NCBI RefSeq assembly: GCF_028641065.1
Contig: NW_026575814.1
Span: forward strand, 124,001-188,000
Reading direction: 5' to 3'
Length of the DNA stretch: 64,000 nucleotides
DNA from: Leucoraja erinacea
Taxonomy: Eukaryota
Part shown: positions 11,833 to 35,218 of the stretch, in pieces
Position numbering within the stretch: position 1 is the first letter of the stretch
Layout: each line of letters starts with the position of its first letter
Notes under the pieces: generated by a model
What the model was told of the DNA's origin: nothing
Database searches by the model: none
What the model saw: the letters and a program-made list of their open reading frames with translations, nothing else
Translations under genes and position numbers: made by a program

Positions 11833-12081
11833 ATTCCCACAGCTTGATATATTTCGCCACCTCCTCCCTCAGTGTCCCTGACCTGCCAGACTTCGCCAGG
11901 GTTGGGATGTTGGATGATCTGCAGATAGATTACTACGACAACTCCCTCGAAGAAGTGGTACCCAGGCAGCAGTGGATTGCGAATGGCTTCACGGCTGAGT
12001 ACTGGGCACGGCAGAAGATGATCGCAGACATCATTCACACGATTGTGTCTAAACAATTGGGAACACATGCCCAATTGCTCG
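11833..12081 (+). CDS. MHC class I alpha1 domain exon (249 bp)
   Basis: Branch-point-like CTAAC (~11802), pyrimidine tract and CAG acceptor ending 11832; donor G|GTATGT at 12082. Translation [83 protein letters not shown] keeps class I hallmarks H3, Y7, D29, W51, Y59, W60. Confidence 0.95.
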
Positions 12082-15000
12082 GTATGTGTCTTTGTACCCC
12101 TCTCAGGCTCACAGTAAATTTCACCTTGCCAAAATATCCGCTATCAGATGGATCCGATGAAGCAGCAGAAATTCCGTCCCCTGCTTTGGAATATGGGAGG
12201 AAACTGGACGGAGGCACCCGGAGAAAACTCATGCTGCGTGGTCATAGTGAGCATGTACAAATTCCGTGCAGTGTGCCCATTGCCCTCATTGTCAGGATCG
12301 AACCCGGGTCTCAAGGCAGCAATTCTACCGCTGCCCCATCATGCCAACAACTTCGGTCTCAATGCGATCGCCCTGCTCTACATACACACTGATGCACACT
12401 ACACCATCTCACACTGTGATTCCCCTGCTCTATATACACACTGATGCACACTACACCATCTCACACTGTGATCGCCCTGCTCTATATACACACTGATGCA
12501 CACTACACCATCTCACACTGTGATTCTCCTGCTCTATATACAAACTGATGCACACTACACCATCTCACTGTGATTCCCCTGCACTATACAAACTGATCCA
12601 CAGTACGCCATCTCTCACTGCGATTCCCTTCTCCGCCCATGATGATGCACAGTACACTCTCTCTCACTATCGCCTGCACTATACACATACTGATGCACAG
12701 TACATCATCGCTCACTGTAACCCCTGCTCTATGCACACTGATGCACAGTAAACCATCTCACTGTGATCCCCTGCTTTGCCCATACTGATGCACAGTACAC
12801 CATCTCTCACTATCCCCTACACTATATAAACTGATGCACAGTACACCATCTCTCACTATCCCCTACACTGCATTGTACACACAATGGATTAACACCGGGT
12901 GGCAGTGTACGATGGCAGCCTCGCCAACAGTCTGTCATGTCCTTTTCTTCTTTTGTTGTTTTTGGTCCATAATTAAATGCATGTTTTAGTGTATTTTCAA
13001 TTTTGTATTATGTTGGGGGGGGCCTTTAAAAAATCTCTTTCCTCGACGGAGATGCAACTTTTTCTGCATCGTAAATCCGTCCACACTGCAGCCTAACATC
13101 GTGCAGCTGACGGTCTCTTGGTTTGGGATCGACTTCGGGAGCTCAAACCACAGGAGATTCGACCGCCCCGATGCGGGAGCTTCATCTCCGGCTGCGGGAG
13201 CTTCCATCACCCCGACTGTGGATGGTTCAACTGCCCCGCAACCGCGAGGAAAAAGCAGGGAAGAAGATAATACGCTATTGCCTTCCATCCCATCACAGGG
13301 GTGGATGTATATGTGAATTTTTATGTTGTTTTATGATTTTTTTTTGTAAGACTGTATGGAAAATCAAATTCTTTGCATGTTTTTACATACTTGGCGAATA
13401 AATTAATTACAACTAGAATTACAATGATGCAATGCACACCATCTCACTGTAATCCCCTGCTCTATACACACCCTGACACACAGTACACCATATAACCATA
13501 TAATATAACCCCATATAACAATTACAGCACGGACACACAGTACACCATCACTGTAACCCTTCTACACACCCTGTCCGTGCCATATAACACATAACAATCT
13601 ACCCGGAAACCCATATCGACCCTTCTAGTCCTCAGAACACATAACCCTCCATATACCTGCGCTCAGACCATAACCCTCCATTCCCTATCCATATAACTAT
13701 CCAATTTATTTTTAAATGATAAAAACGAACCTGCCTCCACCACCTTCACTGGAAGCTCATTCCACACAGCTACCACTCTCTGAGTAAAGAAGTTCCCCCT
13801 CATGTTACCCCTAAACTTCAGTCCCTTAATTCTCATGTCATGTCCCCTTGTTTGAATCTTCCCTACTCTCAGTGGGAAAAGCTTTTCCATGTCAACTCTG
13901 TCTATGCCTCTCATCATTTAAAAAAACCTCTATCAAGTCCCCCCTTAACCTTCTGCGCTCCAAAGAATAAAGCCCTAACTTGTTCAACCTTTCTCTGTAA
14001 CTTAGTTGCTGAAACCCAGGCAACATTCTAGTAAATCTCCTCTGTACTCTCTCTATTTTGTTGACATCCTTCCTATAATTAGGCGACCAAAATTGTACAC
14101 CATACTCCAGAATTGGCCTCACCAATGCCTTGTACAATTTTAACATTACATCCCAACTTCTATACTCAATGCTCTGATTACCATCTCACTGTAATCCCCT
14201 GCTTATACACACTCTGACACACAGTACACCCTCACAGTAATCCCCTGTGCTATACACACCCTGACACACAGTACACCCTCACAGTAATCCCCTGCTCTAT
14301 ACACACCCTGACACACAGTACACCCTCACAGTAATCCCCTGCTCTATACACACCCTGACACACAGTACACCATCTCACTGTAATCCCCTGCCCAGTGTAA
14401 TCTCTCCTCTGCTCTATTGGCTATATTTAAGAGGGAGTTAGATGTGGCCCTTGTGGCCTGGAGAGAAGGCAGGACACACAGTACATGGCGGTGCAGGCTC
14501 ACAGTAATCCCACCCTGCTATTATACACACCCTGACACACAGTACACCATCTCACTGTAATCCCCTGCTCTATACACACCCTGACACACAGTACACAGTA
14601 ATCCCCTGCTCTATACACACCCTGACACACAGTACACCATCTCACTGTAATCCCCTGCTTATACACAGGGGACAGGCTAGATGCAGGAAGATTGTTCCCG
14701 ATGTTGGGGAAGTCCAGGACAAGGGGTCACAGCTTAAGGATAAAGGGGAAATCCTTTAAAACCGAGATGAGAAGAACTTTTTTTCACGCAGAGAGTGGTG
14801 AATCTCTGGAACTCTCTGCCACAGAGGGTAGTTGAGGCCAGTTCATTGGCTATATTTAAGAGGGAGTTAGATGTGGCCCTTGTGGCTAAGGGGATCAGGG
14901 GGTATGGAGAGAAGGCAGGTACGGGATACTGAGTTGGATGATCAGCCATGATCATATTGAATGGCGGTGCAGGCTCGAAGGGCCGAATGGCCTACTCCTG

Positions 15001-17574
15001 CACCTAATTTCTATGTTTCTATGTTTCTATGTTACACACCCTGAGCCACAGTACACCATCTCACTGTAATCCCCTACTCTATACACACCCTGACACACAG
15101 TACACCATCTCACTGTAATCCCCTACTCTATACACACCCTGACACAGTACACCATCCACCATCTCACTGTAATCCCCTGCTTATACACACCCTGACACAC
15201 AGTACACCCTCACAGTAATCCCCTACTCTGCCTACAATCATGCACGGTGTACCCTCTCCTATTTGATCCCCTGCTCTGAACACAATGATGTGAGTGCACA
15301 CACAGCCCCTCTCCATGATCATTCCCCTGTGTACCCACTCACCCTGGCTGTACACATTTGCTCACCGTGATCACAGATTGTTTGAGACACTTTGTGCTGT
15401 ACCACCACCTACGATGCTGCATTCACTCCACCCTCAGCCCCTGCTCTAACATCATCCCCTCACTACAGTCTGCTGCTCCCTGCATCTCGTGGTGACACAG
15501 TGCAGGTCCCATTTAGAAACATAGAAAATAGGTGCAGGAGTAGGCCATTCGGCCCTTCGAGCCTGCACCTCCATTCAATATGATCATGGCTGATCATCCA
15601 ACTCAGTATCCCGCACCTGCCTTCTCTCCATACCCCCTGATCCCTTTAGCCACAAGGGCCACATCTAACTCCCTCCTAAATATAGCCAATGAACTGTGGC
15701 CTCAACTACCTTCTGTGGCAGAGAATTCCACAGATTCACCACTCTCTGTGTGAAAAATGTTTTTCTCATCTCGGTCCTAAAAGATTTCCCCCTTATCCTT
15801 AAACTGTGTGACCCCTTGTTCTGGACTTCCGCAACATCGGGAACAATCTTCCTGCGTCTAGCCTGTCCAACCCCTTAAGAACCCCTTCCGTGTTTGGTAT
15901 GTGTAAAATGATTATGTTGCACAGATCTGGAGTTTAAAGCCATCTCTAATTGTAACACACAGTATAGGGGTACAGCAGGTTGTTAGTTGTTAGTTCATCA
16001 CTACCACTTCCAAGACTACTTAATGTAGGAAGTGGGTGTTAATATAAAGCATACAGTAAGGTGGGGTTAGTGTTGCTACTCTACTATGCTTGGTTCACAT
16101 GCATTAACCAATCTACAGTAGGGAATAGCTTCTCATTCATGACAAATGGTTCTTTACAGGTATCACCTACTTCCAGACGATTTGGGGCTGCACACAGTCT
16201 GAAAATATGAACCATCTGTTTGTAAAGTTTAGCATCCAAGACCTCGGTGCGATTGAGTGTGATCTGGTCACAGTGAACTGTTCCGCCACTGGTATCTTTA
16301 TAATCTTGAACGATCCAAGCACCTTACAGCCTTTCGTTAATAATGTTGCAGTTCAAACAGTGAACAACAGCTGCATTCCAGACTTGCGGGAAGCTCTTCA
16401 GCTTGGTGAGGCGGCACTCGAGAGGAGAGGTAGGTAGGACGGACTTCTCAGTACTTAAGCCCCTGTGTGTGACAGAGTGGGAGCTATGATCCAGGAAGGT
16501 GTGGGTGCTCCCTTTCCGGGACAGTCTGGGGCAGCAATAGAGCGCCCATTTGAGACAGTGAGGGAGCCCAGGGAGGTGAGGGAGCTTCCATTCTGGGACT
16601 GTGAGGTGTCTCTTGACCCAGACAACAAGGGAGCTCACATCGGCTATATTTAATTCCCATTGGCTATATTTAAGAGGGAGTTAGACGTGGCCCTTGTGGC
16701 TAAAGGGATCAGAGGGTATGGAGAGAAGGCAGGTACAGGATACTGAGTTGGATGATCAGCCATGATCATATTGAATGGCGGTGCAGGCTCGAAGGGCCGA
16801 ATGGCCTACTCCTGCACCTATTTTCTATGTTTCTATCCATGATGGTGAGGGAGCACTGATCTGGGACGATTTCCCAATCACGGATGGTGAGGGAGCTTCT
16901 GAGTCAAAATTATTAAAATGAGAAGATTTGGTTACATTCGAAACAGCTCAGATAATGTCTAGGGCCAAAAATAAAAATTTACCTGGAAACATTCAAAAAT
17001 TATTTAACGAGCGTGTGGGGGGTTACAATTTAAGAGGAATATTTAATTTTAAGAAACAAAGAGTCCGTACGACTAGAAAAACCTTTTGTATTTCGGTTTG
17101 TGGAGTAGGAGTGTGGAACAAATTGAACGAGGAATTAAAGCAATGTACAAACATGAATCATTTTAAAATGATATATAAAAAAATAATTTTCATGGGGATG
17201 GCTGACAAGTGGGGGTTAATGTTTATCTATTGCTTTACAATTGTTTACTTATGTTTGGTTGCTTCATATATGAAGTTTGTATGTGTATAATAGCTGTATG
17301 TCTGTAGGTATTATGGGAAAGTGCCTGGGGTAGTATTATTATTATTAATTAATTGATTTTTAAATATGGTAGAAATGTTGGGGAAAAGGGGTGAGATTTA
17401 ATAAGTTATTCTTCTTCTCACTCCTTTTCGAGCTTGTACAGACACAGAGTTGGACATTGGAAATTTGCTTTTTGTTCTTTTCATTGCTTGTAAATATTGA
17501 TTGTAATGTCCAATTGTTTGATAATTTCGATTTTGTTACTATTAATGTCTTTAATGTCTTTACTTGTTCGGAAT

Positions 17575-17605
<31 letters not shown>

Positions 17606-20600
17606 GGCAGGAGAATGGGGTGAGGAAGGAGAGATAGATCAGATTATACTGTACATAAATATAACAACGTTAAACTCAAGTACAATAGATAGTGCTAAGG
17701 GGAAGATACAGTTCATCAGTCCAATAGGCAGAATCCAATGTGGTAGAGGTGAATTGGACAGTACCTTAGCTCAGAAACTTGGTAGCAGAGGTGGTGGTGG
17801 TGCAAGCTTTCAAGCTTCTATACCCTTTGCCCGACTGGAGCAGGGAGAAGAAGGAATGACCGGGGATGGGACAAGTCATTAATTGTGTTGGCTGCTTTTC
17901 TGTGGCAGCGTGGAATGTAGGTGGAGTCAGTGATGGGGAGTCTGGATGCGTGATGGTCTGGGCTACATCTACAACTCTTCGCAATTTTTTTGTGGTCTTG
18001 GGTAGAGCTGTTCCCAAACCAAGCAGTGACAGTATGGAGCTTCTGCAGAGGACTGTAAGAATCATTGGAGTCATGCCAAATTTCCTGCGTCTCCTAAGGT
18101 AGTAGAGGCCTTGGTGTGCCTCCTTGGCTGCTGTATCAATGTGGTAATATTAACGCCAAGGAACTTGAAGATCTGAACCATTTCTACTTCAGCACCATTG
18201 ATACTGAGTGGGGCATGTACTCCACTATGTTTCCTGAACGAGCTAACTAGTTTGTGAGTGAAACAGTGAGACAGCAAGGCTGGTGTGCATAATCTCCATC
18301 TGTAAGTTACTAGGGAAATTGACGAGGGTCAAGCAGTGGTTGTTGTCTATATGGACTTTAGTAAGGCCTTTGACAAGGTTCCTCATGGAAGGTTGGTTAA
18401 GAAGGTTCAACTGTTGGGTATAAATGCAGGAATAGCAAGATGGATTCAACAGTGGCTGAATGGGAGAAGCCAGAGGGTAATGGTGGATGGCTGTTTATCG
18501 GGTTGGAGGCAGGTGACTAGTGGGGTGCCTCAGGGATCTGTGTTGGGTCCTTTGTTGTTTGTCATGTACATCAATGATCTTGATGAAGGTGTGGTAAATT
18601 GGATTAGTAAGTATGCAGATGATACCAAGATAGGGGGTGTTGTGGATAATGAAGAGGATTTCCAAAGTCTACAGAGTGATTTAGGCCATTTGGAAAAATG
18701 GGCTGAAAGATGGCAGATGGAGTTTAATGCTGATAAATGTGAGGTGCTACACCTTGGCAGGTCAAATCAAAATAGGACGTACATGGTAAATGGTAGGGAA
18801 TTGAAGAATACAGTTGAACAGAGGGATCTGGGTATAACCGTGCATAGTTCCTTGAAGGTGGAATCTCATATAGATAGGGTGGTAAAGAAAGCTTTTGGTA
18901 TGCTAGCCTTTATAAATCAGAGCATTGAGTATAGAAGCTGGGATGTAATGTTAAAATTGTACAAGGCATTGGTGAGACCAAATCTGGAGTATGGTGTACA
19001 ATTTTGGTCGCCCAATTATAGGAAGGATGTCAACAAAATAGAGAGAGTACAGAGGAGATTTACTAGAATGTTGCCTGGGTTTCAACAACTAAGTTACAGA
19101 GATAGGTTGAATAAGTTATCTTTATTCTCTGGAGCGCAGAAGGTTAAGGGGGGACCTGATAGAGGTCTTTAAAATGATGAGAGGGATAGACAGAGTTGAT
19201 GTGGACAAGCTTTTCCCTTTGAGAATAGGGAAGATTCAAACAAGAGGACATGACTTCAGAATTAAGGGACAGAAGTTTAGGGGTAATATGAGGGGGAACT
19301 TCTTTACGCAGAGAGTGGTGGCGGTGTGGAATGAGCTCCCAGTGGAAGTGGTGGAGGCAGGTTCATTGGTATCATTTAAAAATAAATTGGATAGGCATAT
19401 GGATGAGAAGGGAATGGAGGGTTATGGTATGAGTGTAGGCAGGTGGGACTAAGGGGGAAAAAAAAAAAAATTTGTTCGGCATGGACTTGTAAGGCCGAGA
19501 TGGCCTGTTTCCATGCTGTAATTGTTATATGGTTATATGGTAAGGTAATGTCCTCTGTGTTAAATTAGTGACGTTACTCTCCATTCTTCCCCAGTTGTTC
19601 CAGGGGTGACAGTGTTGAAAAGGGACAAAGGTGAGGGGCTCCGATGTGTCATCACTCCCTTTTACCCCCGCTCCATCAACGCCACTTGGCTGAGGAATGG
19701 ACAGGCCGTCTCCAATGGCATAAACAAGATCCTTCTACCAAACCACGATGACACGTACAGGATGGAACTGCTCATCGAGCTACACGGCCAAGATCCAAAG
19801 ATGTACAGCTGTCAGGTCCAGCACAGCAGCCTGCCAGAGACGCTGACAATGACACTGAGGGGAGGTAAGTCACTGTATGTTGTCTACAATCTGTTTCACT
19901 CCTGCTTGTAGAAAGGAGATGAGGAGTTTCTTTCGTTGGAGGTTCATTGACACAGAAGGCTGTGGAGGCCGTTAATGGAGATTTTTAAGGAATTATCGTT
20001 TCCTCTGAAGAAGGATGTGCTGGCGTTGGTGAGGGGCCAGAGGAGGATTACGAGAATGAGTCTAGGAATGATTGGGTTCACATATGATAGAAACATAGAA
20101 AATAGGCGCCACTCTCTGTGAAAAATGTTTTTCTCATCTCGGTCCTTGAGGATTTCCCCTTTATCCTTAAACTGTGACCCCTTGTCCTGGACTTCCCCAA
20201 CATCGGGAACAATCTTCCTGCATCTAGCCTGTCCAACCCCTTAAGAATTTTGTAAGTTTCTATAAGATTCCCCCTCAATCTTCTAAATTCTAGCGAGTAC
20301 AAGCCGAGTCTATCCAGTCTTTCTTCATATGGAAAGTCCTGACATCCCAGGAATCAGTCTGGTGAATCTTCTCTGCACTCCCTCTATGGCAAGAATGTCT
20401 TTCCCCAGATTAGGAGACCAAAACTGTACACAATACTCCAGGTGTGGTGTCACCAAGACCCTGTACAACTGCAGTAGAACCTCCCTGCTCCTATACTCAA
20501 ATCCTTTTGCTGATTGTTTTAAGGCACTGGGCCTATACTCGCTGGAGTTTAGATGGATGAGGGGGGACCTCGTTGAAACTTACTGAATTATGAAAGGTCT

Positions 20601-23600
20601 GGATAGAGTGAATGTGGAGAGGATGTTTCCACTATTGGGAGAGTTGAGGACCAGAGGCCATACCCTCAGAATAAAAGGACGTGCCATTAGGAAGGAGATG
20701 AGGAGGAATTACTTTAGTCAGAGGGTGGTGAATCTGTGGAATTCATTGCCACAAACGGCTGTGGAGGTCGTCAATGGATATTTTTACGGCGGAGATTGAC
20801 AGATTCTTGATCAGTAAGAGTATCAGGGGTTATGGGGAGAAGGCAGGAGAATGGGGTTGAGAGGGAAAGATAGATTAGCCATGATTGAATGACAGAGTTG
20901 ACTTGGTAGGCCATTGGCCTAATTTTGCTCCTCGGACTTATGAGCTTAGTGTGAACGGGACCGATAGTCGGCATGGACTCGGAGCATCTTTTGTGGTAAT
21001 CTTCTTCGCTGCTGTGTGCTGGGAAGGCTGGCTCCATCCTGGGGGCAGAGTTGGATTCGTGGGAGGAGGTCTTGGTGGGATGTTCCTCAAACTGCGAAGC
21101 ATCTTGTACAGTAACCATATAACCATATAACAATTACAGCACGGAAACAGGCCATCTCGGCCCTACAAGTCCGTGCCGAACAACTTTTTCCCCCCTTAGT
21201 CCCACCTGCCTGCACTCATACCATAACCCTCCATTCCCTTCTCATCCATATGCCTATCCAATTTATTTTTAAATGATACCAATGAACCTGCCTCCACCAC
21301 TTCCACTGGGAGCTCATTCCACACCGCTACCACTCTCTGCGTAAAGAAGTTCCCCCTCATATTACCCCTAAACTTCTGTCCCTTAATTCTGAAGTCATGT
21401 CCTCTTGTTTGAATCCTCCCTATTCTCAAAGGGAAAAGCTTGTCCACATCAACTCTGTCTATCCCTCTCATCATTTTAAAGACCTCTATCAAGTCCCCCC
21501 TTAACCTTCTGCGCTCCAGAGAATAAAGACCTAACTTATTCAACCTATCTCTGTAACTTAGTTGTTGAAACCCAGGCAACATTCTAGTAAATCTCCTCTG
21601 TACTCTCTCTATTTTGTTGACATCCTTCCTATAATTGGGCGACCAAAATTGTACACCATACTCCAGATTTGGTCTCACCAATGCCTTGTACAATTTTAAC
21701 ATTACATCCCAGCTTCTATACTCAATGCTCTGATTTATAAAGGCTAGCATACCAAAAGCTTTCTTTACCACCCTATCTATATGAGATTCCACCTTCAAGG
21801 AACTATGCACGGTTATACCCAGATCCCTCTGTTCAACTGTATTCTTCAATTCCCTACCATTTACCATGTACAGCTCACCCACTCCATGACACACTGGTCA
21901 ACCTGAGAAGTACCTTCAGCAACAGACTAGTTCCACCAAGATGCAGTACAGATCGCCACAGATCCTTTTTTTCCTGTGGCTTCCAAACCATAACTCCTGC
22001 CCTTTCTGTCGTATAGTAGACTGACTCCCCTCCCCCATCCCCCTCCCCTCTCCATCCATCCCCAAATGTTTGAACATCTCCAATCCTTTCCACTCGTCAC
22101 CATGTTTCATGTGTCTTGTTGTGCTTTATGACTGTTGTCAGTCCAATTTCCTTCCTGGGATAAATTAAACTTCTATCGTATTGTATGGCATTAACCATAT
22201 AACCATATAACATATACCATATAACAATTACAGCACGGAAACAGGCCATCTCCACCCTTCTAGTCCGTGCCGAACACATAATCTCCCCTAGTCCCATATA
22301 CCTGCGCTCAGACCATAACCCTCCATTCCCTTCCCATCCATATAACTATCCAATTTATTTTTAAATGATAAAAACAAACCTGCCTCCACCACCTTCACTG
22401 GAAGCTCATTCCACACAGCTACCACTCTCTGAGTAAAGAAGTTCCCCCTCATGTTACCCCTAAACTTCAGTCCCTTAATTCTCATGTCATGTCCCCTTGT
22501 TTGAATCTTCCCTACTCTCAGTGGGAAAAGCTTTTCCACGTCAACTCTGTCTATCCCTCTCATCATTTTAAAAACCTCTATCAAGTCCCCCCTTAACCTT
22601 CTGCGCTCCAAAGAATAAAGCCCTAACTTGTTCAACCTTTCTCTGTAACTTAGTTGCTGAAACCCAGGCAACATTCTAGTAAATCTCCTCTGTACTCTCT
22701 CTATTTTGTTGACAAATTAAACTCCTCTGCCTGCATGTGAACCACATAGCTCCATTTTCTGCATATCCATGTGCTGATACAAAAGCCTCCTAAATGCCTC
22801 TATCACATCTGCCTCACCACCACAGCCCCTGGCAGTGCATTCCAGGCACCCACCACTTCCCTATGTTTAAAAAAATCCATGCCCCGCACATCTCCTTTAA
22901 AGCCTGTCCCTCTCACCTTAAAGCTATGCCCTCTAGTCTTTGTCATTTCCATGCTGGGGAAAAAAAAAATTCTCACTCTCCATCAAATCTAGATCTGTCA
23001 TAATTTTAGAAACTGCTATCATGCCTACACACAGCCTCTGACGTTCCAGACCAGAGAAAACAATCCAAGCTTGTCCAACCTCTCATTACAGTTAATACCC
23101 TCGAATCCAGGAGCATTATGGCATATGAAACATGAGGGTAATCTAGTTTAGAGATACAGCACGGAAACAGGCCCTTAACATATATAACATATAACAATTA
23201 CAGCACGGAAACAGGCCATCTCGGCCCTACAAGTCCATGCCGAACAATTTTTTTCCCCTTAGTCCCACCTGCCTGCACTCGTACCATAACCCTCCATTCC
23301 CTTCTCATCCATATGCCTATCCAATTTATTTTTAAATGATACCAATGAACCTGCCGCCACCACTTCCACTGGGTGCTCATTCCACACCGCTTCCACTCTC
23401 TGAGTAAAGAAGTTCCCCCTCATATTACCCCTAAACTTCCGTCCCTTAATTCTGAAGTCATGTCCTCTTGTTTGAATCTTCCCTATTCTCAAAGAAAAAA
23501 GCTTGTCCACATCAACTCTGTCTATCCCTCTCATCATTTTAAAGACCTCTATCAGGTCCCCCCTTAACCTTCTGCGCTCCAGAGAATAAAGACCTAACTT

Positions 23601-26600: not shown

Positions 26601-29600
26601 ACGCGCCACCGCCACTCTCCACGCCCCGAAGCCGGCCAGCTCCACGTAGGTAAGTCTGCAGCAGCTCCTCAGCAGCTCCACAGCGGGCTCCACGGCTCTA
26701 CAGCAGGCTCCACGGCTCCACAGCAGCTCCACAGCTCCACAGGCTCCGTGACTTGAGCCTCCAGGTCGTTCCGGTGGAGGCCGCTCCACGGCGCTAGGCC
26801 CCAACGGCAACGGAGCTCCGACAGGGAAAAGGTCAGGTCTCCATACAGGGAAGAGATTAAAGGTTTCCCCCACCCACCCCCCACCCCCCCCACATACACA
26901 TTTAAAAAAAAAAAACGATAAACAGCTACAAACTAAACCCTCAACAGGACAAAAAAACACAGACAGACTGCAGAGGCCGCTGCGACACCGGTAGCGCCGC
27001 CCACAGATCTTTGGATAACCACATGGGTAGGAAAGGGTTATGCGCCAAACCTGGGCAGGTGGGACGGGTGTAGATGGGACATCTTGGTTGGCAAGGGCAA
27101 GTTGGGCTGAAGGGCCTGTTTCCATGCTCTAGGACTATGACTCTACCAGCTGCAACAGAGCCAAATTAGAAATCGATAACTTTCTCAAAACTGGTATGCT
27201 AAATGAATTTTCCCATTATATTAGTTCATTCTGGAGCCACAAAATTGTGTTTAAAGATCCCATTGTATTTTCCTGGTGTTGCCTACATAGATCAACAATG
27301 TTCTTCCTTACACATGTGGTGGTACCTGTTCAACAGATTTCAAGGGTGGTGAAGAAAGCTTTTGGTGTGCTGGCCTTTATAAATCAGAGCATTGAGTATA
27401 GAAGTTGGGATGTAATGTTAAAATTGTACAAGGCTTGGTGAGACCAAATCTGGAATATGGTGTACAATTTTGGTCGCCCAATTATAGGAAGGATGTCAAC
27501 AAAATAGAGAGAGTACAGAGGAGATTTACTAGAATGTTGCCTGGGTTTCAACAACTAAGTTACAGAGATAGGTTGAATAAGTTAGGACTTTATTCTCTGG
27601 AGCACAGAAGGTTAAGGGGGGACTTGATAGAGGTTTTTAAAATGATGAGAGAGATAGACAGAGTTGACGTGGAAAAGCTTTTCCCACTGAGAGTAGGGAA
27701 GATTCAAACAAGGGGACATGACATGAGAATTAAGGGACTGAAGTTTAGGGGTAACATGAGGGGGAACTTCTTTACTCAGAGAGTGGTAGCTGTGTGGAAT
27801 GAGCTTCCAGTGAAGGTGGTGGAGGCAGGTTCGTTTTTATCATTTAAAATAAATTGGATAGTTTATATGGATGGGAAGGGAATGGAGGGTTATGGTCTGA
27901 GCGCAGGTATATGGGACTAGGGGAGATTATGTGTTCGGCACGGACTAGAAGGGTCGAGATGGCCTGTTTCCGTGCTGTAATTGTTATATGGTTATATGGT
28001 ATATGCTGCAAACGTTCACAAGGTTAAGTTTCATTTGTGGTAAGTGAAACAGAGTAACGAGATCAAATATCCTTTATCTATGTTCTGATGCTAGTTGCAA
28101 AACCAGTTTGACTATTTTACTGGAACTGATGCAACTTGAAAGCTATTTTTGTTCAAAGAATGGAAGTGTTCATGAAGTAAGAATGGAAGATGCGTTGGTT
28201 GGTATGCAGTAAGACTTAGAGATACAATGTGGGCATAGTTACAACATCATTAGTCTCGGATGGTCTGTGGTAACACTTGAGCAACCTTGCGTAGAAAGGA
28301 ATTTCAGATAGATGCTGGTTTAAATCGAAGACAGACACAAAGTGCTGGAGTAACATAGAAACATAGAAATTAGGTGCAGGAGTAGGCCATTCGGCCCTTC
28401 GAGCCTGCACCGCCATTTAATATGATCATGGCTGATCATCCAACTCAGTATCCCATACCTGCCTTCTCTCCATACCCTCTGATCCCCTTGGCCACAAGGG
28501 CCACATCTAACTCCCTCTTAAATATAGCCAATGAACTGGCCTCAACTACCCTCTGTGGCAGAGAGTTCCAGAGATTCACCACTCTCTGTGTGAAAAAAGT
28601 TCTCATCTCGGTTTTAAAGGATTTCCCCTTTATCCCTAAGCTGTGACCCCCTTGTCCTGGACTTCTCCAACATCGGGAACAATCTTCCTGCATCTAGCCT
28701 GTCCAACCCCTTAAGAATTTTGTAAGTTTCTATCAGATCCCCTCTCAATCTCCTAAATTCTAGAGAGTATAAACCAAGTCTATCCAGTCTTTCTTCATAA
28801 GACAGTGGGACAGGCAGCATCTCTGGAGAGAATGGGTGATGTTTCGGGTCGAGACCTTTCTTCAGCAACCTTGCTTTGAGAACAGTACAACATGTATAGC
28901 AGACCGTGTTTATGTCCACAGTTACAGTCATAGAACCATAATGTGTGGAAACAGGCCCTTCGGCCCAGCTTGCCCATGCCAGCCAAGGTGCACCAGAAAC
29001 TTCATCCTCACCTGCCATGTTTGGTCCATATACCTCTAAACATTTCCTGTCCACGTACCTATCCAAATGTTTTTTAAAAGCTGTGATAATTTCTGCCTAA
29101 CTACCTCATCCGGCGGCTCATTTCATAACCACCACCTGCTGTCGGGAAAAGTTGCCCCTCAAATTGCTATTAAATCTTTCCCCTCTCACCTTAAACCTAT
29201 CTCCTCGCGGCACGACTCTCGTCAGCAGCGGCCTCTGCAGCCCGTCTGCGTTTTTATTATTTTTTGTCTATTTTTTTACGTAGTTTTTGTTATTTTTTGT
29301 GGGGGGTGTGTGTGTGGGGGGGGGGGGGGGGTGGGGTGGGAGGGAGGGGGTAACTTTTAATCTCTCCCTGCACGGGAGACCCGACCTTTTCTTTGTCGGG
29401 TCTCCGTTGTCGTTGGGGCTGCAACGAGGAGCGGCCTCCAACAGGAGAAGACCGGGGGCTCTGGTGCCGACGACTCACCTCACCGTCGCGGAGCTGGCCG
29501 AGTCCAGAGCGGGTGGAGCGGTGGTGGAGCGCTGCTGCTGCTGCGGCCCGACCTCCGGAGATTCGGAGGCTGCAACTGCGGGTCTGGCGGACGGCGGCAC

Positions 29601-32600
29601 CGGGAGCCCGCGGGTCCCTGGAGGGAGACCGCTTTTCAGGGCTCCCGCAACGGCGACTTCTCCCGCCCGAGTTGCGGGGTCGAAGAGCTCCTGGAGCGGG
29701 GCCTCACAGCACCGCCCCACGCGGCTTGGAATGGCCGCGGGACTCTGCGAGCACACGCCGGGGGCTCTAACATCAAGAACCCGGTGTGCGACCTCGCACC
29801 ACCCGGCGTGGCTTTAATGGCCGCGGGACAATTGCCATCGCCAGCCGGGGGCTTTGACTTTGACTCTGTCATCGGGGGGGGGGGGGGGGGAGTGCAGTGG
29901 AGAGATAAAGAGATACGTTTTTTTGGCCTTCCATCACAGCGATGTGATGGATGTTTATGTAAATTATGTTGTCTTGGGTCTAGTTGTTTGTAATGTATGG
30001 CTGCAGAAACGGCATGTCGTTTGGACCTCAAGGGGTCCAAATGACAAATAAATTGTATCTTGTATCTTGTATTTTGCTTCCCCTACTGTGGGTAAAAGAC
30101 TGGGCCATCTTCACTTCCTGAAGCCCAACACAATCTCCTTTGTTTGCAGTCTAACACAAGAAACTCCAAAAGCTGGGGTGTTGAGGAAAACAGAAAGGGC
30201 TGTACAAACTCAGGCGGTCAGGTTGCCACTGTGGAAGGAAATGGAACAGGTGGCGTATGGGGTCGGACACAAGGAAGTGCAGCGGAATCCTGAACAAAAC
30301 ACAATGTGCTGGAGTAACGCAATGGACCAGGCAGCACCTGTGGAGGGAATGGACTCAAAGAACTTCAGATGCTGTAATCCTGAGCATGAGATTCGACTCG
30401 AAGCGTTGCCTGTCCATTTCCCTCCACAGATGCTGCCTGACCCACTGGGTTCCTCCTCTACTCATTTCATAAGTAACAGGAGCAGAATTAGGCCATTCAG
30501 CCCATCTCCACCTACTCCACCTTTCAATCATGGCTGATCTATATCTCCCTCCTAACCCCATTCTACTGCCTTCGCCCCATAACCCCTGATAGAAACATAG
30601 AAACATAGAAATTAGGTGCAGGAGTAGGCCATTCGGTCCTTCGAGCCTGCACCGCCATTCAATATGATCATGGCTGATCATCCAACTCAGTATCCCGTAC
30701 CTGCCTTCTCTCCATACCCCCTGATCCCCTTAGCCACAAGGGCCACATCTAACTCCCTCTTAAATATAGCCAATGAACTGGCCTCAACTACCCTCTGTGG
30801 CAGAGAGTTCCAGAGATTCACCACTCTCTGCGTGAAAAAAGTTCGTCTCATCTCGGTTTTAAAGGATTTCCCCTTTATCCTTAAGCTGTGACCTCTTGTC
30901 CTGGACTTCCCTAACATCGGGAACAATCTTCCTGCATCTAGCCTGTCCAACCCCTTAAGAATTTTGTAAGTTTCTATAAGATCCCCTCTCAATCTTCTAA
31001 ATTCTAGAGAGTATAAACCAAGTCTATCCAGTCTTTCTTCATAAGACAGTCCTGACATCCCAGGAATCAGTCTGGTGAACCGTCTCTGCTCTCCCTCTAT
31101 GGCAATAATGTCCTTCCTCAGATTAGGAGACCAAAACTGTACGCAATACTCCAGGTGTGGTCTCACCAAGACCCTGTACAACTGCAGTAGAACCTCTCTG
31201 CTCCTATACTCAAATCCTTTTGCAATGAAAGCTAACATACCATTCGCTTTCTTTACTGCCTGCTGCACCTGCATGCCTACCTTCAATGACTGGTGTACCA
31301 TGACACCCAGGTCTCGCTGCATCTCCCCCTTTTCCAATCGGCCACCATTTAGCCTTACTAATCAAGAATTTTTCTCTGTCTTACAAATATCCACTGACTT
31401 GGCCTCCACAGCCTTATGTGGCAAAGAATTCCACAGATTTGCCACCCTCTGACTAAAGAAATTCCTTCTCATCTCCTTCCTAAAAGAACGTCCTTTAATT
31501 CTGAGGCTATGACCTCCTCTGTCGTGGGGTAGACTGAGACTGACTCTCCACTTCCCACCCCCCACCCTCTCCCCTCCCCAATCTTTACACATCCCCAATC
31601 CTTTCCACTCGTCACATTCATTTCATGGTTCATATATTTTGTGTTTTTATGGCTGTGGGCAGATCAATTTCCTTCCTCGGATGAATAAAGTTCTATCGTA
31701 TCTTATCGTTCACCCCATCGTCGAGCACTGCGTACATAGCTCAGCATTTCAAGTACACATTTAGCCAGCATAAATGTGGTGTGTGTTTCTAGCTCCATCA
31801 CACTCTACCAGCAATGATTTCCAGACACCTCCAACCTCTGTGTGGAAAATGTTTCAAACTCTCCTCCAAATCCTACCGATCACATCCAATCTTTCATTTT
31901 GTTTTTGACTGCTCTGTTAAGGACAGTAGGTCTTCCCTATTTACTCTGTTCAGGTCCCTTATTAAATAAATGTGGATAAATGTGAGGTTATCCATTTTGG
32001 TGGCAAAAACGGGAAAGCAGACTATTATCTAAATGGTGGCCGATTGGGAAAGGGGGAGATGCAGCGAGACCTGGGTGTCATGGTACACCAGTCATTGAAG
32101 GTAGGCATGCAGGTGCAGCAGGCAGTAAAGAAAGCGAATGGTATGTTAGCTTTCATTGCAAAAGGATTTGAGTATAGGAGCAGGGAGGTTCTACTGCAGT
32201 TGTACAGGGTCTTGGTGAGACCACACCTGAAGTATTGCGTACAGTTTTGGTCTCCAAATCTGAGGAAAGACATTATTGCCATAGAGGGAGTGCAGAGACG
32301 GTTCACCAGACTGATTCCTGGGATGTCAGGACTGTCTTATGAAGAAAGACTGGATAGACTTGGTTTATACTCTCTAGAATTTAGAAGATTGAGAGGGGAT
32401 CTTATAGAAACTTACAAAATTCTTAAGGGGTTGGACAGGCTAGATGCAGGAAGATTGTTCCCGATGTTAGGGAAGTCCAGGACAAAGGGGTCACAGCTTA
32501 AGGATAAGGGGGAAATCCTTTAAAACCGAGATGAGAAGAACTTTTTTCACACAGAGAGTGGTGAATCTCTGGAACTCTCTGCCGCAGAGGGTAGTTGAGG

Positions 32601-35177
32601 CCAGTTCATTGGCTATATTTAAGAGGGAGTTAGATATGGCCCTTGTGGCTAAGGGGATCAGGGGGTATGGAGAGAAGGCAGGTACGGGATACTGAGTTGG
32701 ATGATCAGCCATGATCATATTGAATGGCGGTGCAGGCTCGAAGGGCAGAATGGCCTCTACTCCTGCACCTAATTTCTATGTTTCTATGTTTCTAAACCAA
32801 CCCTCAGCTTCCTACTTTCCTAAGAGAGAGGAACGGTGGTGCAGTGGTAGAGTTGCTGCCTTACAGTGCCCGAGACCCAGGTTCGATTCCCACTGTGGGA
32901 GTTGGCTGTATGGAGTTTGTACGTTCTCCCCGTGACTGCATGGGTTTTCTCCAAGATCTTCGGTTTCCTCCCACACTCCTAAGACGTAAAAGTTTGTACG
33001 TTAATTGGCTGGTGTAAGTGTAAAATTGTAAATTGGCTCTCGTGCATGTGTAGGATAGCGTTAATGTGCGGAGATGGCTGTATCTCTAAACTAAAAATAA
33101 CCTAAAGAACCACAGCCTATTCAAATATTCCTGACATGGGCAACTGGGTCATCTTGGTCAGCAAGACCAAATTGGGCCAAAGGGCCTTTTTCTGCGCTGG
33201 ATGACTCTATTGCTAATTTACTCAGTCTCTGTAAATCTCACCTGCATCATTGGCAGGGTCCTGGAGTGTATTATAGAGCAGAGGAATCTTGTACAGGGTT
33301 CCATGACAGTGGCATCAAAGGTATTTAGGGTGGTATAGAAGGCTATTGGTACATTGGTCTTCATCAGACATGGTATTGAGGATAGAAGTTGACACGTTAC
33401 ATTTGTACAAGACGTTGGTGAGGCCACAGTTGGAGTATTGTGTTCAGTTTTAGTCATCCTGCCATAACAAGGATATAACCATATAAACCATATAACAATT
33501 ACAGCACAGAAACAGGCCATCTCGACCCTTCTAGTCCGTGCCGAACACATAATCTCCCCTAGTCCCATATACTTGCGCTCAGACCATAACCCTCCATTCC
33601 CTTCCCATCCATATAACTATCCAATTTATTTTTAAATGATAAAAACGAACCTGCCTCCACCACCTTCACTGGAAGCTCATTCCACGCAGCTACCACTCTC
33701 TGAGAAAAGAAGTTCCCCCTCATGTTACCCCTAAACTTCAGTCCCTTAATTCTCATGTCATGTCCCCTTGTTTGAATCTTCCCTACTCTCAGTGGGAAAA
33801 GCTTTTCCATGTCAACTCTGTCTATCCCTCTCATCATTTTAAAAACATCTATCAAGTCCCCCCTTAACCTTCTGCGCTCCAAAGAATAAAGCCCTAACTT
33901 GTTCAACCTTTCTCTGTAACTTAGTTGCTGAAACCCAGGCAACATGTCATTAAGATGGAAAGAGTGCAGAGAAGATAAACAAGGGTGTTGCTAGGACTCA
34001 ACAGACTGAGCATAGGGATGTCTTAATTAGGGTCTTGACCCGAAGCATCACTTATTCCTTTTCTCCAGAGATGCTGCCTGACCCGCGATGTTAGTCCAGC
34101 TTTTTACCTGTATATTTTGAGCATCGGGAGAGGTTAGATAGGCCAGAACTTCTTAGAGCACAGGAGGCTGAGGGGTGATCTTTTCAAGGTGACTAAATCA
34201 TGAGGGGAATAGATAGGGTGAATGCCCAGTCTTTTATCCAGGGTAGGGGAATCAAGAACCAGAGGGTATATGTTTAAGATGAGAGGGACAAGATGTAATA
34301 GGAAGCTGAGGGACTTTGAGGGTGGTGGGTATATGGAACGAAATGCCAGAGGAGGTAGTTGAGGCAGGTACTATAACAGCATTTAAGATACTTGGACTGA
34401 TACATGGACAAATAGGATTAGACATGACTTCAGAATTAAGGGACAGAAGTTTAGGGGTAACATGAGGGGGAACTTCTTTACTCAGAGAGTGGTAGCGGTG
34501 AGGAATGAGCTTCCAGTGGAAGTGGTGGAGGCAGGTTCGTTGGTATCATTTAAAAATAAATTGGATAGGCATATGGATGAGAAGGGAATGGAGGGTTATG
34601 GTATGAGTGCAGGCAGGTGGGACTAAGGGAAGAAAGTTGTTCGGCACGGACTTGTAGGGCCGAGATGGCCTGTTTCCGTGCTGTAATTGTTATATGGTTA
34701 TAAGATGGGGCATCATGGTTGGCAAGAATGAATTTTCACTGTACCTCAGTACACGTGACAATAAACCACACTAACTATACCAAAGAGTTGGGAAAGTTAG
34801 CTGTATGATCCCAAGACATATAAAGAGGGTGGCAAATCTGAGGAATGTTTTGCCACACAAGGCTGTGTAGGCCGTCAGTGGATATATTTAAGGCAGATAA
34901 ATAGATTCTTGATTAGTACAGGTTTCAGAGGTTATGGGGAGAAGGCAGGAGAATTGGGTTAGGAGGGAGAGATAGAGCAACTATGGCGGAGTAGACTTGA
35001 TGGGCCGAATGGCCTAATTCTGCTCTTATCGCTTATGATCTTATGATCTATGTTCTTCGCCTAATATCTACTGTATTTGCTTGCTGGGCAGGTGTTGGTG
35101 GGCCACGTGATGCATTTGGAGCTAGTTACATGCTGGTGCTCGTGGCTACGCTTGTGATGATCATTGGAACATGGTAG
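11833..35177 (+). CDS. Non-classical MHC class I-like heavy chain gene, spliced: join(11833..12081,16160..16429,19595..19864,35092..35177); leader exon not found
   Basis: Four AG/GT-bounded exons in the canonical order, all joined in phase 1. They translate without frameshift to alpha1 (DSHSLIYF...PRQQWI...EYW), alpha2 (FQTIWGC...[20 protein letters not shown]), a C1-set Ig alpha3 ([21 protein letters not shown]...LPNHDDTY...[10 protein letters not shown]) and a hydrophobic TM-like segment. Confidence 0.9.
12895..13420 (+). mobile_element. GC-rich non-coding retroposon-like element (copy 1)
   Basis: Same layout as copies at 26195, 29205 and 59712; ends at AATAAA plus a short repeat. Confidence 0.6.
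13490..14180 (-). mobile_element. CR1 LINE 3' fragment, family B1 (3' end scrambled)
   Basis: ORFs 13663-13917 and 13892-14146. Confidence 0.88.
14668..15032 (+). mobile_element. CR1 LINE 3' fragment, family A
   Basis: Family A 3' coding end, UTR and (CTATGTTT)n tail. Confidence 0.9.
15514..15880 (-). mobile_element. CR1 LINE 3' fragment, family A
   Basis: Family A tail and UTR. Confidence 0.88.
16160..16429 (+). CDS. MHC class I alpha2 domain exon (270 bp)
   Basis: TTCTTTACAG acceptor ending 16159; donor G|GTAGGT at 16430. Translation [90 protein letters not shown] has Q96, G100, C101 and C164 equivalents. Confidence 0.92.
16657..16835 (+). mobile_element. CR1 family A 3' UTR fragment
   Basis: GATCAGCCATGATCATATTGAATGGCGGTGCAGG...CTATGTTTCTA. 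Confidence 0.88.
16905..17602 (+). mobile_element. Crack/L2-group LINE 3' end
   Basis: ORF 16928-17290 (YNLRG..F....[18 protein letters not shown]), AT-rich UTR, (AAAT)n tail at 17572-17600. Confidence 0.75.
17770..18300 (-). mobile_element. Rex1/Babar-like LINE fragment, degenerate
   Basis: [18 protein letters not shown] and [13 protein letters not shown] motifs. Confidence 0.7.
18300..19541 (+). mobile_element. CR1 LINE RT fragment, family B2 (1.2 kb, one frameshift)
   Basis: ORF 18336-19172 with [21 protein letters not shown]; continues in ORF 19174-19452. Confidence 0.95.
19595..19864 (+). CDS. MHC class I alpha3 (C1-set Ig) domain exon (270 bp)
   Basis: Pyrimidine tract plus CAG acceptor ending 19594; donor G|GTAAGT at 19865. 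Contains L-x-C, FYP, W-L-R-N-G, LPNxDxTY and YSCxVxHSSL motifs. Confidence 0.96.
20087..20510 (-). mobile_element. CR1 family A fragment inside an older CR1
   Basis: ORF 20078-20302; ORF 20590-20799 is the older host. Confidence 0.85.
20980..22190 (+). mobile_element. Rex1/Babar LINE 3' fragment, split by CR1-B2
   Basis: IFFAAVCW...LKLRSIL [CR1] [24 protein letters not shown]...SFFPVA. Confidence 0.75.
21112..21870 (-). mobile_element. CR1 LINE 3' fragment, family B2
   Basis: ORF 21196-21894. Confidence 0.93.
22192..22713 (-). mobile_element. CR1 LINE 3' fragment, family B1
   Basis: ORF 22288-22674 plus tail. Confidence 0.92.
23180..23675 (-). mobile_element. CR1 LINE 3' fragment, family B2
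   Basis: ORF 23259-23645. Confidence 0.92.
23706..23965 (-). mobile_element. HE1/V-SINE-like SINE
   Basis: Reverse complement of the tRNA head (GGGTTCGATCCC B box) and core. Confidence 0.78.
24280..25045 (+). mobile_element. CR1 LINE 3' fragment, family B1 (many micro-insertions)
   Basis: ORFs 24165-24422 and 24708-24959. Confidence 0.88.
25700..25844. mobile_element. Small hAT-like MITE
   Basis: TIRs CAGTAGCGGACTG / CAGTCCGCCACTG; GCTCCACC near both flanks (imperfect 8-bp TSD); internal GGGCCCACTT x4. Confidence 0.65.
26195..27002 (-). mobile_element. GC-rich non-coding retroposon-like element (copy 2)
   Basis: ACAGAT TSD at 26189-26194 and 27003-27008; AATAAA plus (TATTG)n tail; two hairpins near the 3' end. 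Confidence 0.75.
27342..28005 (+). mobile_element. CR1 family B fragment, B2/B1 chimera
   Basis: ORF 27405-27920. Confidence 0.9.
28352..28808 (-). mobile_element. CR1 LINE 3' fragment, family A
   Basis: ORFs 28445-28693 and 28614-29066 (part). Confidence 0.9.
29205..30072 (+). mobile_element. GC-rich non-coding retroposon-like element (copy 3)
   Basis: GCAGCGGCCTCTGCAG head shared with copy 2; AATAAA plus (TTGTATC)n tail; inserted in an old CR1. Confidence 0.75.
30589..31352 (-). mobile_element. CR1 LINE 3' fragment, family A
   Basis: ORF 30687-31337. Confidence 0.93.
31967..32793 (+). mobile_element. CR1 LINE 3' fragment, family A
   Basis: ORF 31972-32523 plus tail. Confidence 0.93.
32830..33095 (+). 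mobile_element. HE1/V-SINE-like SINE
   Basis: A box GGTGGTGCAGTGG, B box GGTTCGATTCC, core and CTAAA tail. Confidence 0.8.
33474..33945 (-). mobile_element. CR1 LINE 3' fragment, family B1
   Basis: ORF 33559-33945. Confidence 0.92.
34420..34702 (+). mobile_element. CR1 LINE 3' fragment, family B2
   Basis: Coding end, UTR and tail. Confidence 0.88.
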
Positions 35178-35218
35178 AGACGAGGAGCAATGAGGAGAGA
35201 GGTCAGGTGTGATAACAG
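35092..35218 (+). CDS. Probable connecting-peptide/transmembrane exon of the MHC I-like gene; in-frame TAG at 35175-35177
   Basis: CAG acceptor ending 35091, phase 1 matching the alpha3 donor. Reads [41 protein letters not shown], then a strong donor AG|GTGAGT at 35219. Unique (non-repeat) sequence. Confidence 0.75.

What the first reader, a model, noticed from the sequence alone, without database searches (positions are those of the whole stretch)
11833..35218. Highly divergent non-classical MHC class I molecule, possibly an undescribed chondrichthyan lineage
Seen: intact alpha1-alpha3 exons. By manual alignment to HLA numbering, only Y7 and Y59 of the eight peptide-terminus anchors remain: 84=L, 143=N, 146=S, 147=T, 159=T, 171=A (also 123=A, 167=D). 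The alpha1 helix is aliphatic ([10 protein letters not shown]), and the alpha2 helix region has GIFIIL and three prolines. H3-D29, W60, Q96, C101-C164 and alpha3 P235 are kept; the H93-D119 pair, G120 and D122 are lost. Established: cartilaginous fish have classical UAA and several non-classical lineages (UBA-UFA, one of them CD1-like). Inference: a non-peptide (lipid or small hydrophobic ligand) or closed groove with altered beta2m contact. I cannot place it in a known lineage from memory.
Basis: partly seen in the sequence, partly recalled or inferred. Interest (0 to 1): 0.85.

Follow-up and report, generated by a model that had tools for sequence, protein, structure and literature searches.

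The report
Little skate UFA class I gene
This is the little skate's copy of UFA, an already named shark-and-ray family of MHC class I-like molecules reported to carry lipids instead of peptides; the gene is intact and expressed, but it is not a new lineage.

Summary
The exons are real and intact. Alpha1 (11833-12081), alpha2 (16160-16429), alpha3 (19595-19864) and a last coding exon (35092-35218, stop at 35175-35177) all lie on the + strand in phase 1.

Their translations are 100% identical to RefSeq XP_055521808.1 of Leucoraja erinacea (316 aa, auto-named "MR1-like"). The window is therefore little skate and the gene is already annotated.

All three domains match PDB 8GM8 best, "shark nonclassical MHC class I, UFA" (245 bits). 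UGA (9CH4) scores 126 bits and classical class I 100 or less. The alpha2 exon alone matches nothing else in the PDB.

Relatives occur in sharks, skates, electric rays, sawfish and stingrays. Their tree follows the species tree, with one copy in skates.

Spliced transcripts of about 1.1-1.35 kb encode the same protein in many runs, with about 22 variable residues. Contigs of an older run (RNA by the tool's guess) stop at the exon borders.

The "undescribed lineage" claim fails. The "hydrophobic, non-peptide ligand" reading agrees with what is reported for UFA.

The whole family ends right after a short hydrophobic segment. This looks like a GPI-anchor signal, but that is inferred, not tested.

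The parts
11833..12081 (+). Alpha1 exon (249 nt, phase 1 at both ends). It encodes residues 26-108 of XP_055521808.1 and the first base of codon 109.
   Evidence: AG at 11831-32 and GT at 12082-83. Pfam MHC_I 1.9e-9. Best PDB hit 8gm8_A at 4.8e-18. 82/82 identical to P0032. A contig of run X1 stops at 11830 (record 1).
12082..16159 (+). Intron 2 (4078 nt), filled with LINE fragments.
   Evidence: ORF list. Read depth is zero or near zero (at most about 5) in the unique intron bins and very high on the repeats.
16160..16429 (+). Alpha2 exon (270 nt). It holds C119 and C180 (the C101-C164 equivalents) and an extra cysteine pair, C142 and C149, in the motif [14 protein letters not shown].
   Evidence: AG at 16158-59 and GT at 16430-31. 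No Pfam hit. The only PDB sequence hit is 8gm8_A at 8.6e-13. 89/89 identical to P0032. X1 contigs start at 16159 and end at 16429 (records 7 and 8).
16430..19594 (+). Intron 3 (3165 nt), with a reverse-transcriptase ORF at 18336-19172.
   Evidence: RVT_1 3.6e-23.
19595..19864 (+). Alpha3 exon (270 nt), an Ig C1-set domain with C216 and C271.
   Evidence: AG at 19593-94 and GT at 19865-66. C1-set 2.7e-13. 8gm8_A at 5.3e-26. 89/89 identical to P0032.
19865..35091 (+). Intron 4 (15227 nt), made of LINE fragments and a pair of GC-rich inverted repeats.
   Evidence: Homologues join alpha3 directly to the last coding exon.
35092..35218 (+). Last coding exon. It encodes the GVGG motif, a 9-residue spacer and a 16-residue hydrophobic end (residues 289-316). 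Stop TAG is at 35175-35177, followed by 41 nt of untranslated sequence up to a GT at 35219-20.
   Evidence: 27/27 identical to P0032 and P0024. The same abrupt end is seen in skate, sawfish, stingray, manta and four shark models.

Best explanation
The region holds exons 2-5 of the little skate (Leucoraja erinacea) orthologue of UFA. UFA is a non-classical, MHC-linked class I lineage of sharks and rays.

Shown here:
- The gene is intact.
- It is spliced as modelled and transcribed.
- It is single-copy in this window.
- It is the same protein as RefSeq XP_055521808.1.
- It groups with the crystallised shark UFA in every domain.

Inferred:
- The heavy chain folds as a class I platform. Its groove has lost the residues that clamp peptide ends and is lined by aliphatic side chains (I, A, I, I and V at the positions of HLA 66, 67, 70, 73 and 74).
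- It therefore most likely holds a lipid or lipid-like ligand and shows it to lymphocytes. The discoverers report this for shark UFA from crystal and mass-spectrometry data.
- The protein has no cytoplasmic tail. It ends in small residues, a spacer and 16 hydrophobic residues. It is therefore probably GPI-anchored, or at least lacks any endosomal sorting motif. If so, it would load ligand in the secretory pathway or at the cell surface, not in endosomes as CD1b-d do.
For: Identity:
- All four exon translations are 100% identical to P0032 = XP_055521808.1 of Leucoraja erinacea.

Lineage:
- By phmmer, P0032 scores 245 bits against 8gm8_A, 126 bits against 9ch4_A, and 100 or less against every classical, MR1 or other chain.
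- The alpha2 exon matches 8gm8_A only.
- With an AlphaFold model of P0032 (pLDDT 71.6), Foldseek and VIA-align both rank 8GM8 first: E 6.8e-26, TM 0.86; Z 23.4, rmsd 2.4 over 250 residues. The entry title is 'shark nonclassical MHC CLASS I, UFA'.

Family:
- 25 relatives come from 6 shark and 8 batoid species. They share the extra alpha2 cysteine pair and the tail-less end.
- The tree splits sharks from batoids at 100/100. Leucoraja pairs with Amblyraja at 100/100.

Expression:
- The 90% cluster holds 42 distinct 316-aa proteins. Of the 15 members listed, 14 come from Logan contigs of 1.1-1.35 kb, which can only be spliced cDNA.
- Contigs of run X1 (RNA by the tool's guess) break at 11830, 16159 and 16429.
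- Raw oligo-dT reads cover the exons at depth 1-10. The unique intron bins read zero or close to it.

Groove:
- The HMMER alignment to a classical chain gives N, S, T, T and A at positions 143, 146, 147, 159 and 171.

Reported function:
- PMC12562908 says crystal structure and mass spectrometry suggest UFA and UGA bind lipids like those of CD1d.
Against: - No ligand, beta2m pairing or anchor type was tested here.
- The lipid claim for UFA is so far only 'unpublished data' or 'personal communication' in the two papers I could read.
- The model is of middling confidence, so I could not measure the shape of the groove.
- Skate UFA is only 42-44% identical to the crystallised shark UFA. Its alpha2 is 33-43% identical to non-skate relatives, so its ligand could differ.
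- CD1 chains are not among the 50 nearest structures.
- Expression in the two raw-read runs is low.
- I had no sequences of UAA-UEA in hand, so there is no per-domain tree against the other lineages. Lineage placement rests on PDB scores and shared signatures.
Confidence: 0.85

Rival explanations
1. It is a UFA orthologue, but it does not present antigen. The hydrophobic groove is closed or holds a structural lipid. The GPI-linked molecule would then serve as a ligand for NK-type or other innate receptors, or as a carrier, in the way of Qa-2, ULBP, EPCR or FcRn.
For: - The protein has no cytoplasmic tail and a GPI-signal-like end, as in ULBP and Qa-2.
- FcRn chains appear among the structural neighbours at Z of about 19.5.
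- Differences between the two skate genera fall mostly on outward-facing alpha1 helix positions (the equivalents of 58, 61, 62, 65 and 69). The inward aliphatic positions are unchanged. This would fit a receptor-contact surface.
Against: - The discoverers report bound lipids for UFA and UGA (PMC12562908).
- The nearest structures after UFA are chicken YF1*7.1 with bound lipid or lipopeptide (Z 20.4-21.0).
- Variation at about 17 alpha1 and alpha2 sites fits a ligand-showing surface.
Confidence: 0.2
2. It belongs to a chondrichthyan class I lineage that nobody has described.
For: - Pfam does not recognise alpha2.
- RefSeq gives family members only automatic names, among them MR1-like, CD1d-like and HFE homolog.
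- No research paper on UFA is in the searchable library.
Against: - All domains match the deposited UFA structure best, by a wide margin.
- The lineage is named in PMC10751288 and PMC12562908.
- The lineage signatures are shared: the extra alpha2 cysteine pair, the GMLDDLQ strand and the tail-less end.
Confidence: 0.03
3. It is a decaying or unexpressed pseudogene.
For: - The stop comes directly after the hydrophobic segment. A basic stretch (RRGAMRRE) follows in frame and could look like a truncated tail.
- Introns are very long and full of repeats.
- Read depth is low.
Against: - The same stop position is shared by skates, sawfish, stingrays, mantas and sharks, so it is ancestral.
- All exons are open, and all six structural cysteines are kept.
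- Alpha3 differs from Amblyraja at 3 of 90 residues, against 12 of 83 in alpha1 and 14 of 90 in alpha2.
- Full-length spliced transcripts are assembled in many runs.
Confidence: 0.02

Closest known systems
Shark UFA (PDB 8GM8, 'Crystal structure of shark nonclassical MHC CLASS I, UFA', released 2024-11-27)
   Same: - Best match in alpha1, alpha2 and alpha3.
- Same domain order.
- Same extra cysteine pair in the alpha2 hairpin.
- Same loss of the peptide-end anchors.
- Same conserved GMLDDLQ floor strand.
- The shark genome models of the family share the tail-less end.
   Different: - Only 42-44% identical overall, with a long skate stem branch (0.42) in the tree.
- Several helix residues differ, for example the equivalents of positions 66, 73 and 81.
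- The crystallised construct lacks the C-terminus, so it says nothing about the anchor.
Shark UGA (PDB 9CH4, released 2026-03-18)
   Same: It is the second elasmobranch class I lineage said to be CD1-like. It is next-best by sequence (126 bits) and a close structural neighbour (Z 20.1).
   Different: - 29% identity.
- In the printed alignment it has no cysteine at either position of the extra alpha2 pair.
- By sequence, the alpha2 exon does not find it at all.
CD1 (mammals, birds, reptiles)
   Same: What it may work like: a beta2m-type class I fold with a hydrophobic groove, reported to bind CD1d-type lipids (PMC12562908).
   Different: - Not a member. Pfam MHC_I_3 scores 15.1 bits against a cut-off of 35.
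- No CD1 chain is in the top 50 structural matches.
- It has no cytoplasmic tail, so it lacks the tyrosine-based endosomal motif that I recall for CD1b, CD1c and CD1d (from my own knowledge).
Chicken YF1*7.1 (PDB 3P73, 9EB2-9EB6)
   Same: After UFA itself, these are the nearest solved structures to the model (Z 20.4-21.0). YF1*7.1 is a class I-type molecule whose narrow hydrophobic groove holds lipids or acylated peptides.
   Different: About 24% identity and an unrelated lineage. The margin over classical chains is only about 1 Z unit, which is close to a tie.
GPI-anchored class I-like molecules (mouse Qa-2, human ULBP1-3; from my own knowledge)
   Same: The C-terminus has small residues, a short spacer and a hydrophobic stretch that ends the protein, with no basic stop-transfer residues or tail.
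   Different: No sequence relationship beyond the class I fold. GPI attachment of UFA is my inference, not a tested fact.
Classical elasmobranch class I UAA (PDB 6LUP)
   Same: Same exon layout and phases. Alpha1 is recognisably similar over residues 1-61 (4.4e-11).
   Different: UAA keeps the peptide-end anchors. By sequence, the skate alpha2 does not find it at all. The whole-protein score is 83 bits, against 245 for UFA.

Membership tests
UFA lineage (elasmobranch non-classical class I) | Every extracellular domain is closer to the reference UFA than to any other class I lineage. | tested here: met
   8gm8_A is the top hit for alpha1 (68 bits), alpha2 (the only hit, 51.5 bits) and alpha3 (93.7 bits). 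The whole protein scores 245 bits, against 126 for UGA and 100 or less for the rest. Structural rank is 1.
UFA lineage (elasmobranch non-classical class I) | It clusters with family members of other sharks and rays in a tree that follows the species tree. | tested here: met
   sharks versus batoids 100/100, Leucoraja plus Amblyraja 100/100. No other lineages were available as outgroups, so monophyly against UAA-UGA was not tested by tree.
UFA lineage (elasmobranch non-classical class I) | Shared sequence signatures: an extra cysteine pair in the alpha2 hairpin, the GMLDDLQ strand, and loss of the peptide-terminus anchors. | tested here: met
   Alignment A1 and the alignment to 8gm8. C142 and C149 are present. 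The 143, 146, 147, 159 and 171 equivalents are N, S, T, T and A.
UFA lineage (elasmobranch non-classical class I) | It maps in the MHC class Ib cluster with UDA and UEA (PMC10751288). | not testable with these tools
   The window holds only this gene and transposon debris.
UFA lineage (elasmobranch non-classical class I) | Single or low copy number (PMC12562908). | tested here: met
   There is one copy in the window, and one 90% cluster each for Leucoraja and Amblyraja. Stingrays and mantas have 5 or more copies.
UFA lineage (elasmobranch non-classical class I) | Binds lipid in the groove and pairs with beta2m. | not testable with these tools
   Known only from statements in PMC10751288 and PMC12562908. 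No skate beta2m sequence was in hand for a complex prediction.
CD1 | A CD1-type alpha1-alpha2 domain (Pfam MHC_I_3) and nearest structural neighbours among CD1 chains. | tested here: not met
   MHC_I_3 scores 15.1 bits against a cut-off of 35. No CD1 chain is in the top 50 of Foldseek or VIA-align.
CD1 | A cytoplasmic tail with a tyrosine-based endosomal sorting motif (CD1b, c, d; from my own knowledge). | tested here: not met
   The protein ends at W316, directly after the hydrophobic segment.
Classical class I (UAA) | The conserved set of residues that bind the peptide N- and C-termini (7, 59, 84, 143, 146, 147, 159, 171). | tested here: not met
   Only Y7 and Y59 remain.
GPI-anchored proteins | A C-terminal signal made of a small omega, omega+1 and omega+2 triplet, a spacer of about 5-10 residues, and a hydrophobic tail of about 10-20 residues that ends the protein. 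| tested here: inconclusive
   The pattern fits by eye: G-V-G, a 9-residue spacer, and 16 hydrophobic residues with mean Kyte-Doolittle 2.16. It is conserved in 20 or more family members. No GPI predictor or experiment was available.

The most novel reading that the evidence does not exclude
UFA, including this skate gene, may be a GPI-anchored lipid-presenting class I molecule. The missing cytoplasmic tail dates back to the common ancestor of sharks and rays. If so, the oldest known CD1-like system would sample lipids without endosomal targeting. In skates it would also be oligomorphic, with variation and between-genus change concentrated on the outward face of the helices. None of this is stated in the papers I could read.
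Probability: 0.35. Interest if true: 0.5.

Novelty: new member of a known kind. Interest (0 to 1): 0.25.

Why it matters
It matters little as a discovery. The lineage has a name, a crystal structure and a RefSeq entry for this very protein.

It is useful as annotation. RefSeq calls the family by misleading automatic names, among them MR1-like, CD1d-like and HFE homolog. This work ties the skate, sawfish, stingray, manta, electric-ray and shark genes to UFA.

Two family-wide features deserve a bench test because they bear on how an ancient CD1-like molecule gets its ligand:
- the tail-less, GPI-signal-like end;
- the extra alpha2 disulfide.

The little skate is a laboratory animal in which that could be done.

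Tried and rejected
- I searched the spliced model exon by exon, by reference. For whole-protein work I used database protein P0032, which the tools returned and which equals the four exon translations.
- **Alpha1 exon search.** The search for homologous proteins saw only one short sawfish fragment because of its length window. The alpha2 exon in the representative library gave the first full-length relatives.
- I therefore had no DNA of orthologues, no dN/dS, no check of synteny in other species, and no check whether the basic stretch after the stop is conserved.
- **Leader exon.** I found none in 1-11832 by local alignment or exact words. It lies upstream of the window.
- **Papers.** Nothing was found for '8GM8'. 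Hits for '9CH4' were unrelated. The two J Immunol papers on UDA and UEA are not held. The supplements of PMC10751288 do not mention UFA. No paper on GPI anchoring of shark class I turned up.
- **Per-domain tree against UAA-UGA, CD1, MR1 and the teleost lineages.** Not done. I used PDB bit scores and fold ranks instead.
- **Beta2m complex prediction.** Not run, because no skate beta2m sequence was in hand.
- **Pseudogene idea from the stop after the hydrophobic segment.** Rejected, because the stop is shared across the family.
- **Variable sites.** The excess in alpha1 and alpha2 over alpha3 is not significant: 17 of 173 against 3 of 90, Fisher p = 0.08.
Full report
**What is in the sequence**

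Four coding exons lie on the + strand, each with AG/GT borders and all in phase 1, the usual class I layout.
- Alpha1: 11833-12081.
- Alpha2: 16160-16429.
- Alpha3: 19595-19864.
- Last coding exon: 35092-35218, with TAG at 35175-35177.

The introns are 4078, 3165 and 15227 nt. They are packed with fragments of reverse-transcriptase elements. Pfam recognises alpha1 as MHC_I (1.9e-9) and alpha3 as Ig C1-set (2.7e-13). It finds nothing in alpha2. The leader exon is not in the window. An earlier unchecked note of this scan places a signal-peptide exon about 1.1 kb before the window start. That would make intron 1 about 13 kb.

**How I handled the spliced model**

Whole-protein work used a database protein that the tools returned.

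**Whose gene it is**

The alpha2 exon, searched against 1.8 billion representative proteins, found three full-length relatives. A search from the sawfish relative found 26. [quoted passage not shown] All four exon translations equal that protein at 82/82, 89/89, 89/89 and 27/27 residues. The window is therefore little skate, the gene model is confirmed, and the gene is already in RefSeq under an automatic name. The thorny skate orthologue, XP_032903622.1, differs at 12 of 83 residues in alpha1, 14 of 90 in alpha2 and 3 of 90 in alpha3.

**Which lineage**

Each exon matches one PDB chain best, 8gm8_A. For alpha2 it is the only match in the whole PDB. The whole protein scores as follows:
- 245 bits against 8gm8_A;
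- 126 bits against 9ch4_A;
- 100 or less against every classical, MR1 or other chain.

An AlphaFold model of the RefSeq protein (25-row alignment, pLDDT 71.6) ranks 8GM8 first in both structural comparisons:
- Foldseek: E 6.8e-26, TM 0.86.
- VIA-align: Z 23.4, rmsd 2.4 over 250 residues.

Those outputs give the entry titles. 8GM8 is 'Crystal structure of shark nonclassical MHC CLASS I, UFA' (released 2024-11-27). 9CH4 is the same for UGA (released 2026-03-18).

UFA is named in Verissimo et al. 2023 (PMC10751288). [quoted passage not shown] A 2025 review (PMC12562908) says UFA and UGA occur in sharks and rays, are single or low copy, and by crystal structure and mass spectrometry seem to bind CD1d-type lipids. 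Both statements are flagged there as unpublished or personal communication. I found no primary paper.

**The family**

The 25 members I aligned come from six sharks and eight batoids. They share:
- the GMLDDLQ floor strand;
- C101-C164;
- an extra cysteine pair in the alpha2 hairpin, also present in 8GM8;
- an abrupt end after a short hydrophobic stretch.

The tree separates sharks from batoids (100/100) and pairs the two skates (100/100) on a long stem of 0.42. It shows duplications only in sawfish, stingrays and mantas. The skate gene is thus the single-copy orthologue, not an odd paralogue. I had no outgroup sequences of the other named lineages, so membership rests on the PDB scores, the fold ranks and the shared signatures.

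**Is it alive**

The 90% cluster holds 42 distinct 316-aa proteins. Of the 15 members listed, 14 come from Logan contigs of only 1.1-1.35 kb. With 22 kb of introns, these must be spliced transcripts.

I laid reads on 11600-16600. Contigs of an older run (RNA by the tool's guess) stop at 11830, 16159 and 16429, which are the exon borders. One of them carries 359 further letters downstream. Raw oligo-dT reads of two 2026 runs, of which about 5% were sampled, cover the exons at depth 1-10. The unique intron bins read zero or close to it.

The reads carry G>A at 11874 (V40I) and at 16232 (S133N), and a silent C>T at 16284. These are the same variants seen among the transcript-derived proteins. The 15 proteins listed vary at:
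- 10 sites in alpha1;
- 7 in alpha2;
- 3 in alpha3;
- 2 in the C-terminal exon;
- 5 in the leader.

Pairwise they differ by 1-15 residues. The excess in alpha1 and alpha2 is not significant (p = 0.08). Some variants could also come from a sister species.

- H3, Y7, D29, Y59, W60, Q96, C101 and C164 are present in the exon translations.
- Position 84 is T or L, depending on the gap.
- By the same numbering, the inward-facing alpha1 helix positions 66, 67, 70, 73 and 74 are I, A, I, I and V. They are unchanged between the two skate genera.
- The between-genus changes sit at the equivalents of 58, 61, 62, 65 and 69, which face outward in classical molecules (the numbering is my own).

**How it most likely works**

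Shown: it has a class I fold and belongs to the UFA lineage. The peptide-end anchors are lost and the groove face is aliphatic.

Inferred: it holds a lipid-like ligand and displays it, as reported for shark UFA.

It is not a CD1 family member:
- Pfam's CD1-type domain scores 15.1 bits against a cut-off of 35.
- No CD1 chain is among the 50 nearest structures.
- The nearest structures after UFA are chicken YF1*7.1 with bound lipids or acylated peptides (Z 20.4-21.0). That is only about one unit above classical chains.

**The end of the protein**

After alpha3 come the residues G-G-V-G-G, then a 9-residue spacer, then 16 hydrophobic residues, then the stop. There are no basic residues and no tail. 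Skates, sawfish, stingrays, mantas and four sharks all end the same way. The stop is therefore ancestral and not a recent lesion.

The pattern is that of a GPI-attachment signal. This is my reading by eye, because no predictor was available. The alternative is a tail-less membrane span, though 16 residues is short for that. Either way there is no endosomal sorting motif, which sets the protein apart from CD1b-d.

**Verdict**

The 'non-peptide groove' reading agrees with what is reported for the lineage. The 'undescribed lineage' claim is refuted. The gene is an ordinary, working member of a known and thinly published family, and interest is low. The anchor question and the skate polymorphism are the only parts that might be new.

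**Limits**

- I could compute no dN/dS and check no synteny.
- I ran no beta2m test and no outgroup tree.

Noticed in passing
window 35175-35218: Directly after the TAG, the same frame reads a basic stretch (RRGAMRREVRCDN) up to the GT at 35219. It looks like the start of a class I cytoplasmic tail. The stop is ancestral to the family, so this may be chance in a purine-rich untranslated region. I could not compare it with other species.
   Followed up: partly
window 11874, 16232, 16284: RNA reads of other individuals carry G>A (V40I), G>A (S133N) and a silent C>T. Among 15 transcript-derived proteins of the 90% cluster, 27 sites vary, and residue 76 has three states (N, S, K). The reference allele (V40, S133) is the rarer one.
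   Followed up: partly
alignment A1 (P0018-P0022, Hemitrygon and Hypanus): One stingray subclade of UFA copies has a 4-residue deletion in the alpha2 hairpin and has lost the second cysteine of the extra pair. Four of the five copies have also lost the first. Stingrays and mantas carry five or more UFA copies, whereas skates and sharks show one.
   Followed up: partly
P0027 (Narcine bancroftii model): The electric-ray family member ends in a charged stretch instead of the hydrophobic segment. It may be a secreted form or an incomplete gene model.
   Followed up: no
window 26242-27124 and 28946-30030: A pair of GC-rich elements sits in inverted orientation inside intron 4. The arms are 71-135 nt and 77-80% complementary. 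Both carry glycine-rich ORFs.
   Followed up: partly
window-wide, e.g. 1198-1584, 6168-6554, 13663-14146, 22288-22674, 33559-33945, 49236-49742: More than 20 copies, in both orientations, of the same LINE 3' end (reverse-transcriptase C-terminus beginning [23 protein letters not shown]). Longer RVT_1 ORFs lie at 18336-19172, 40709-41770 and 43699-45637. Repeat parts of the laid stretch reach read depths in the hundreds to thousands in RNA runs.
   Followed up: partly
upstream of window start: The leader exon of this gene (MESCNVPVSLLF...) is not in the window. It may be exon 1 of this gene and not a separate paralogue.
   Followed up: no
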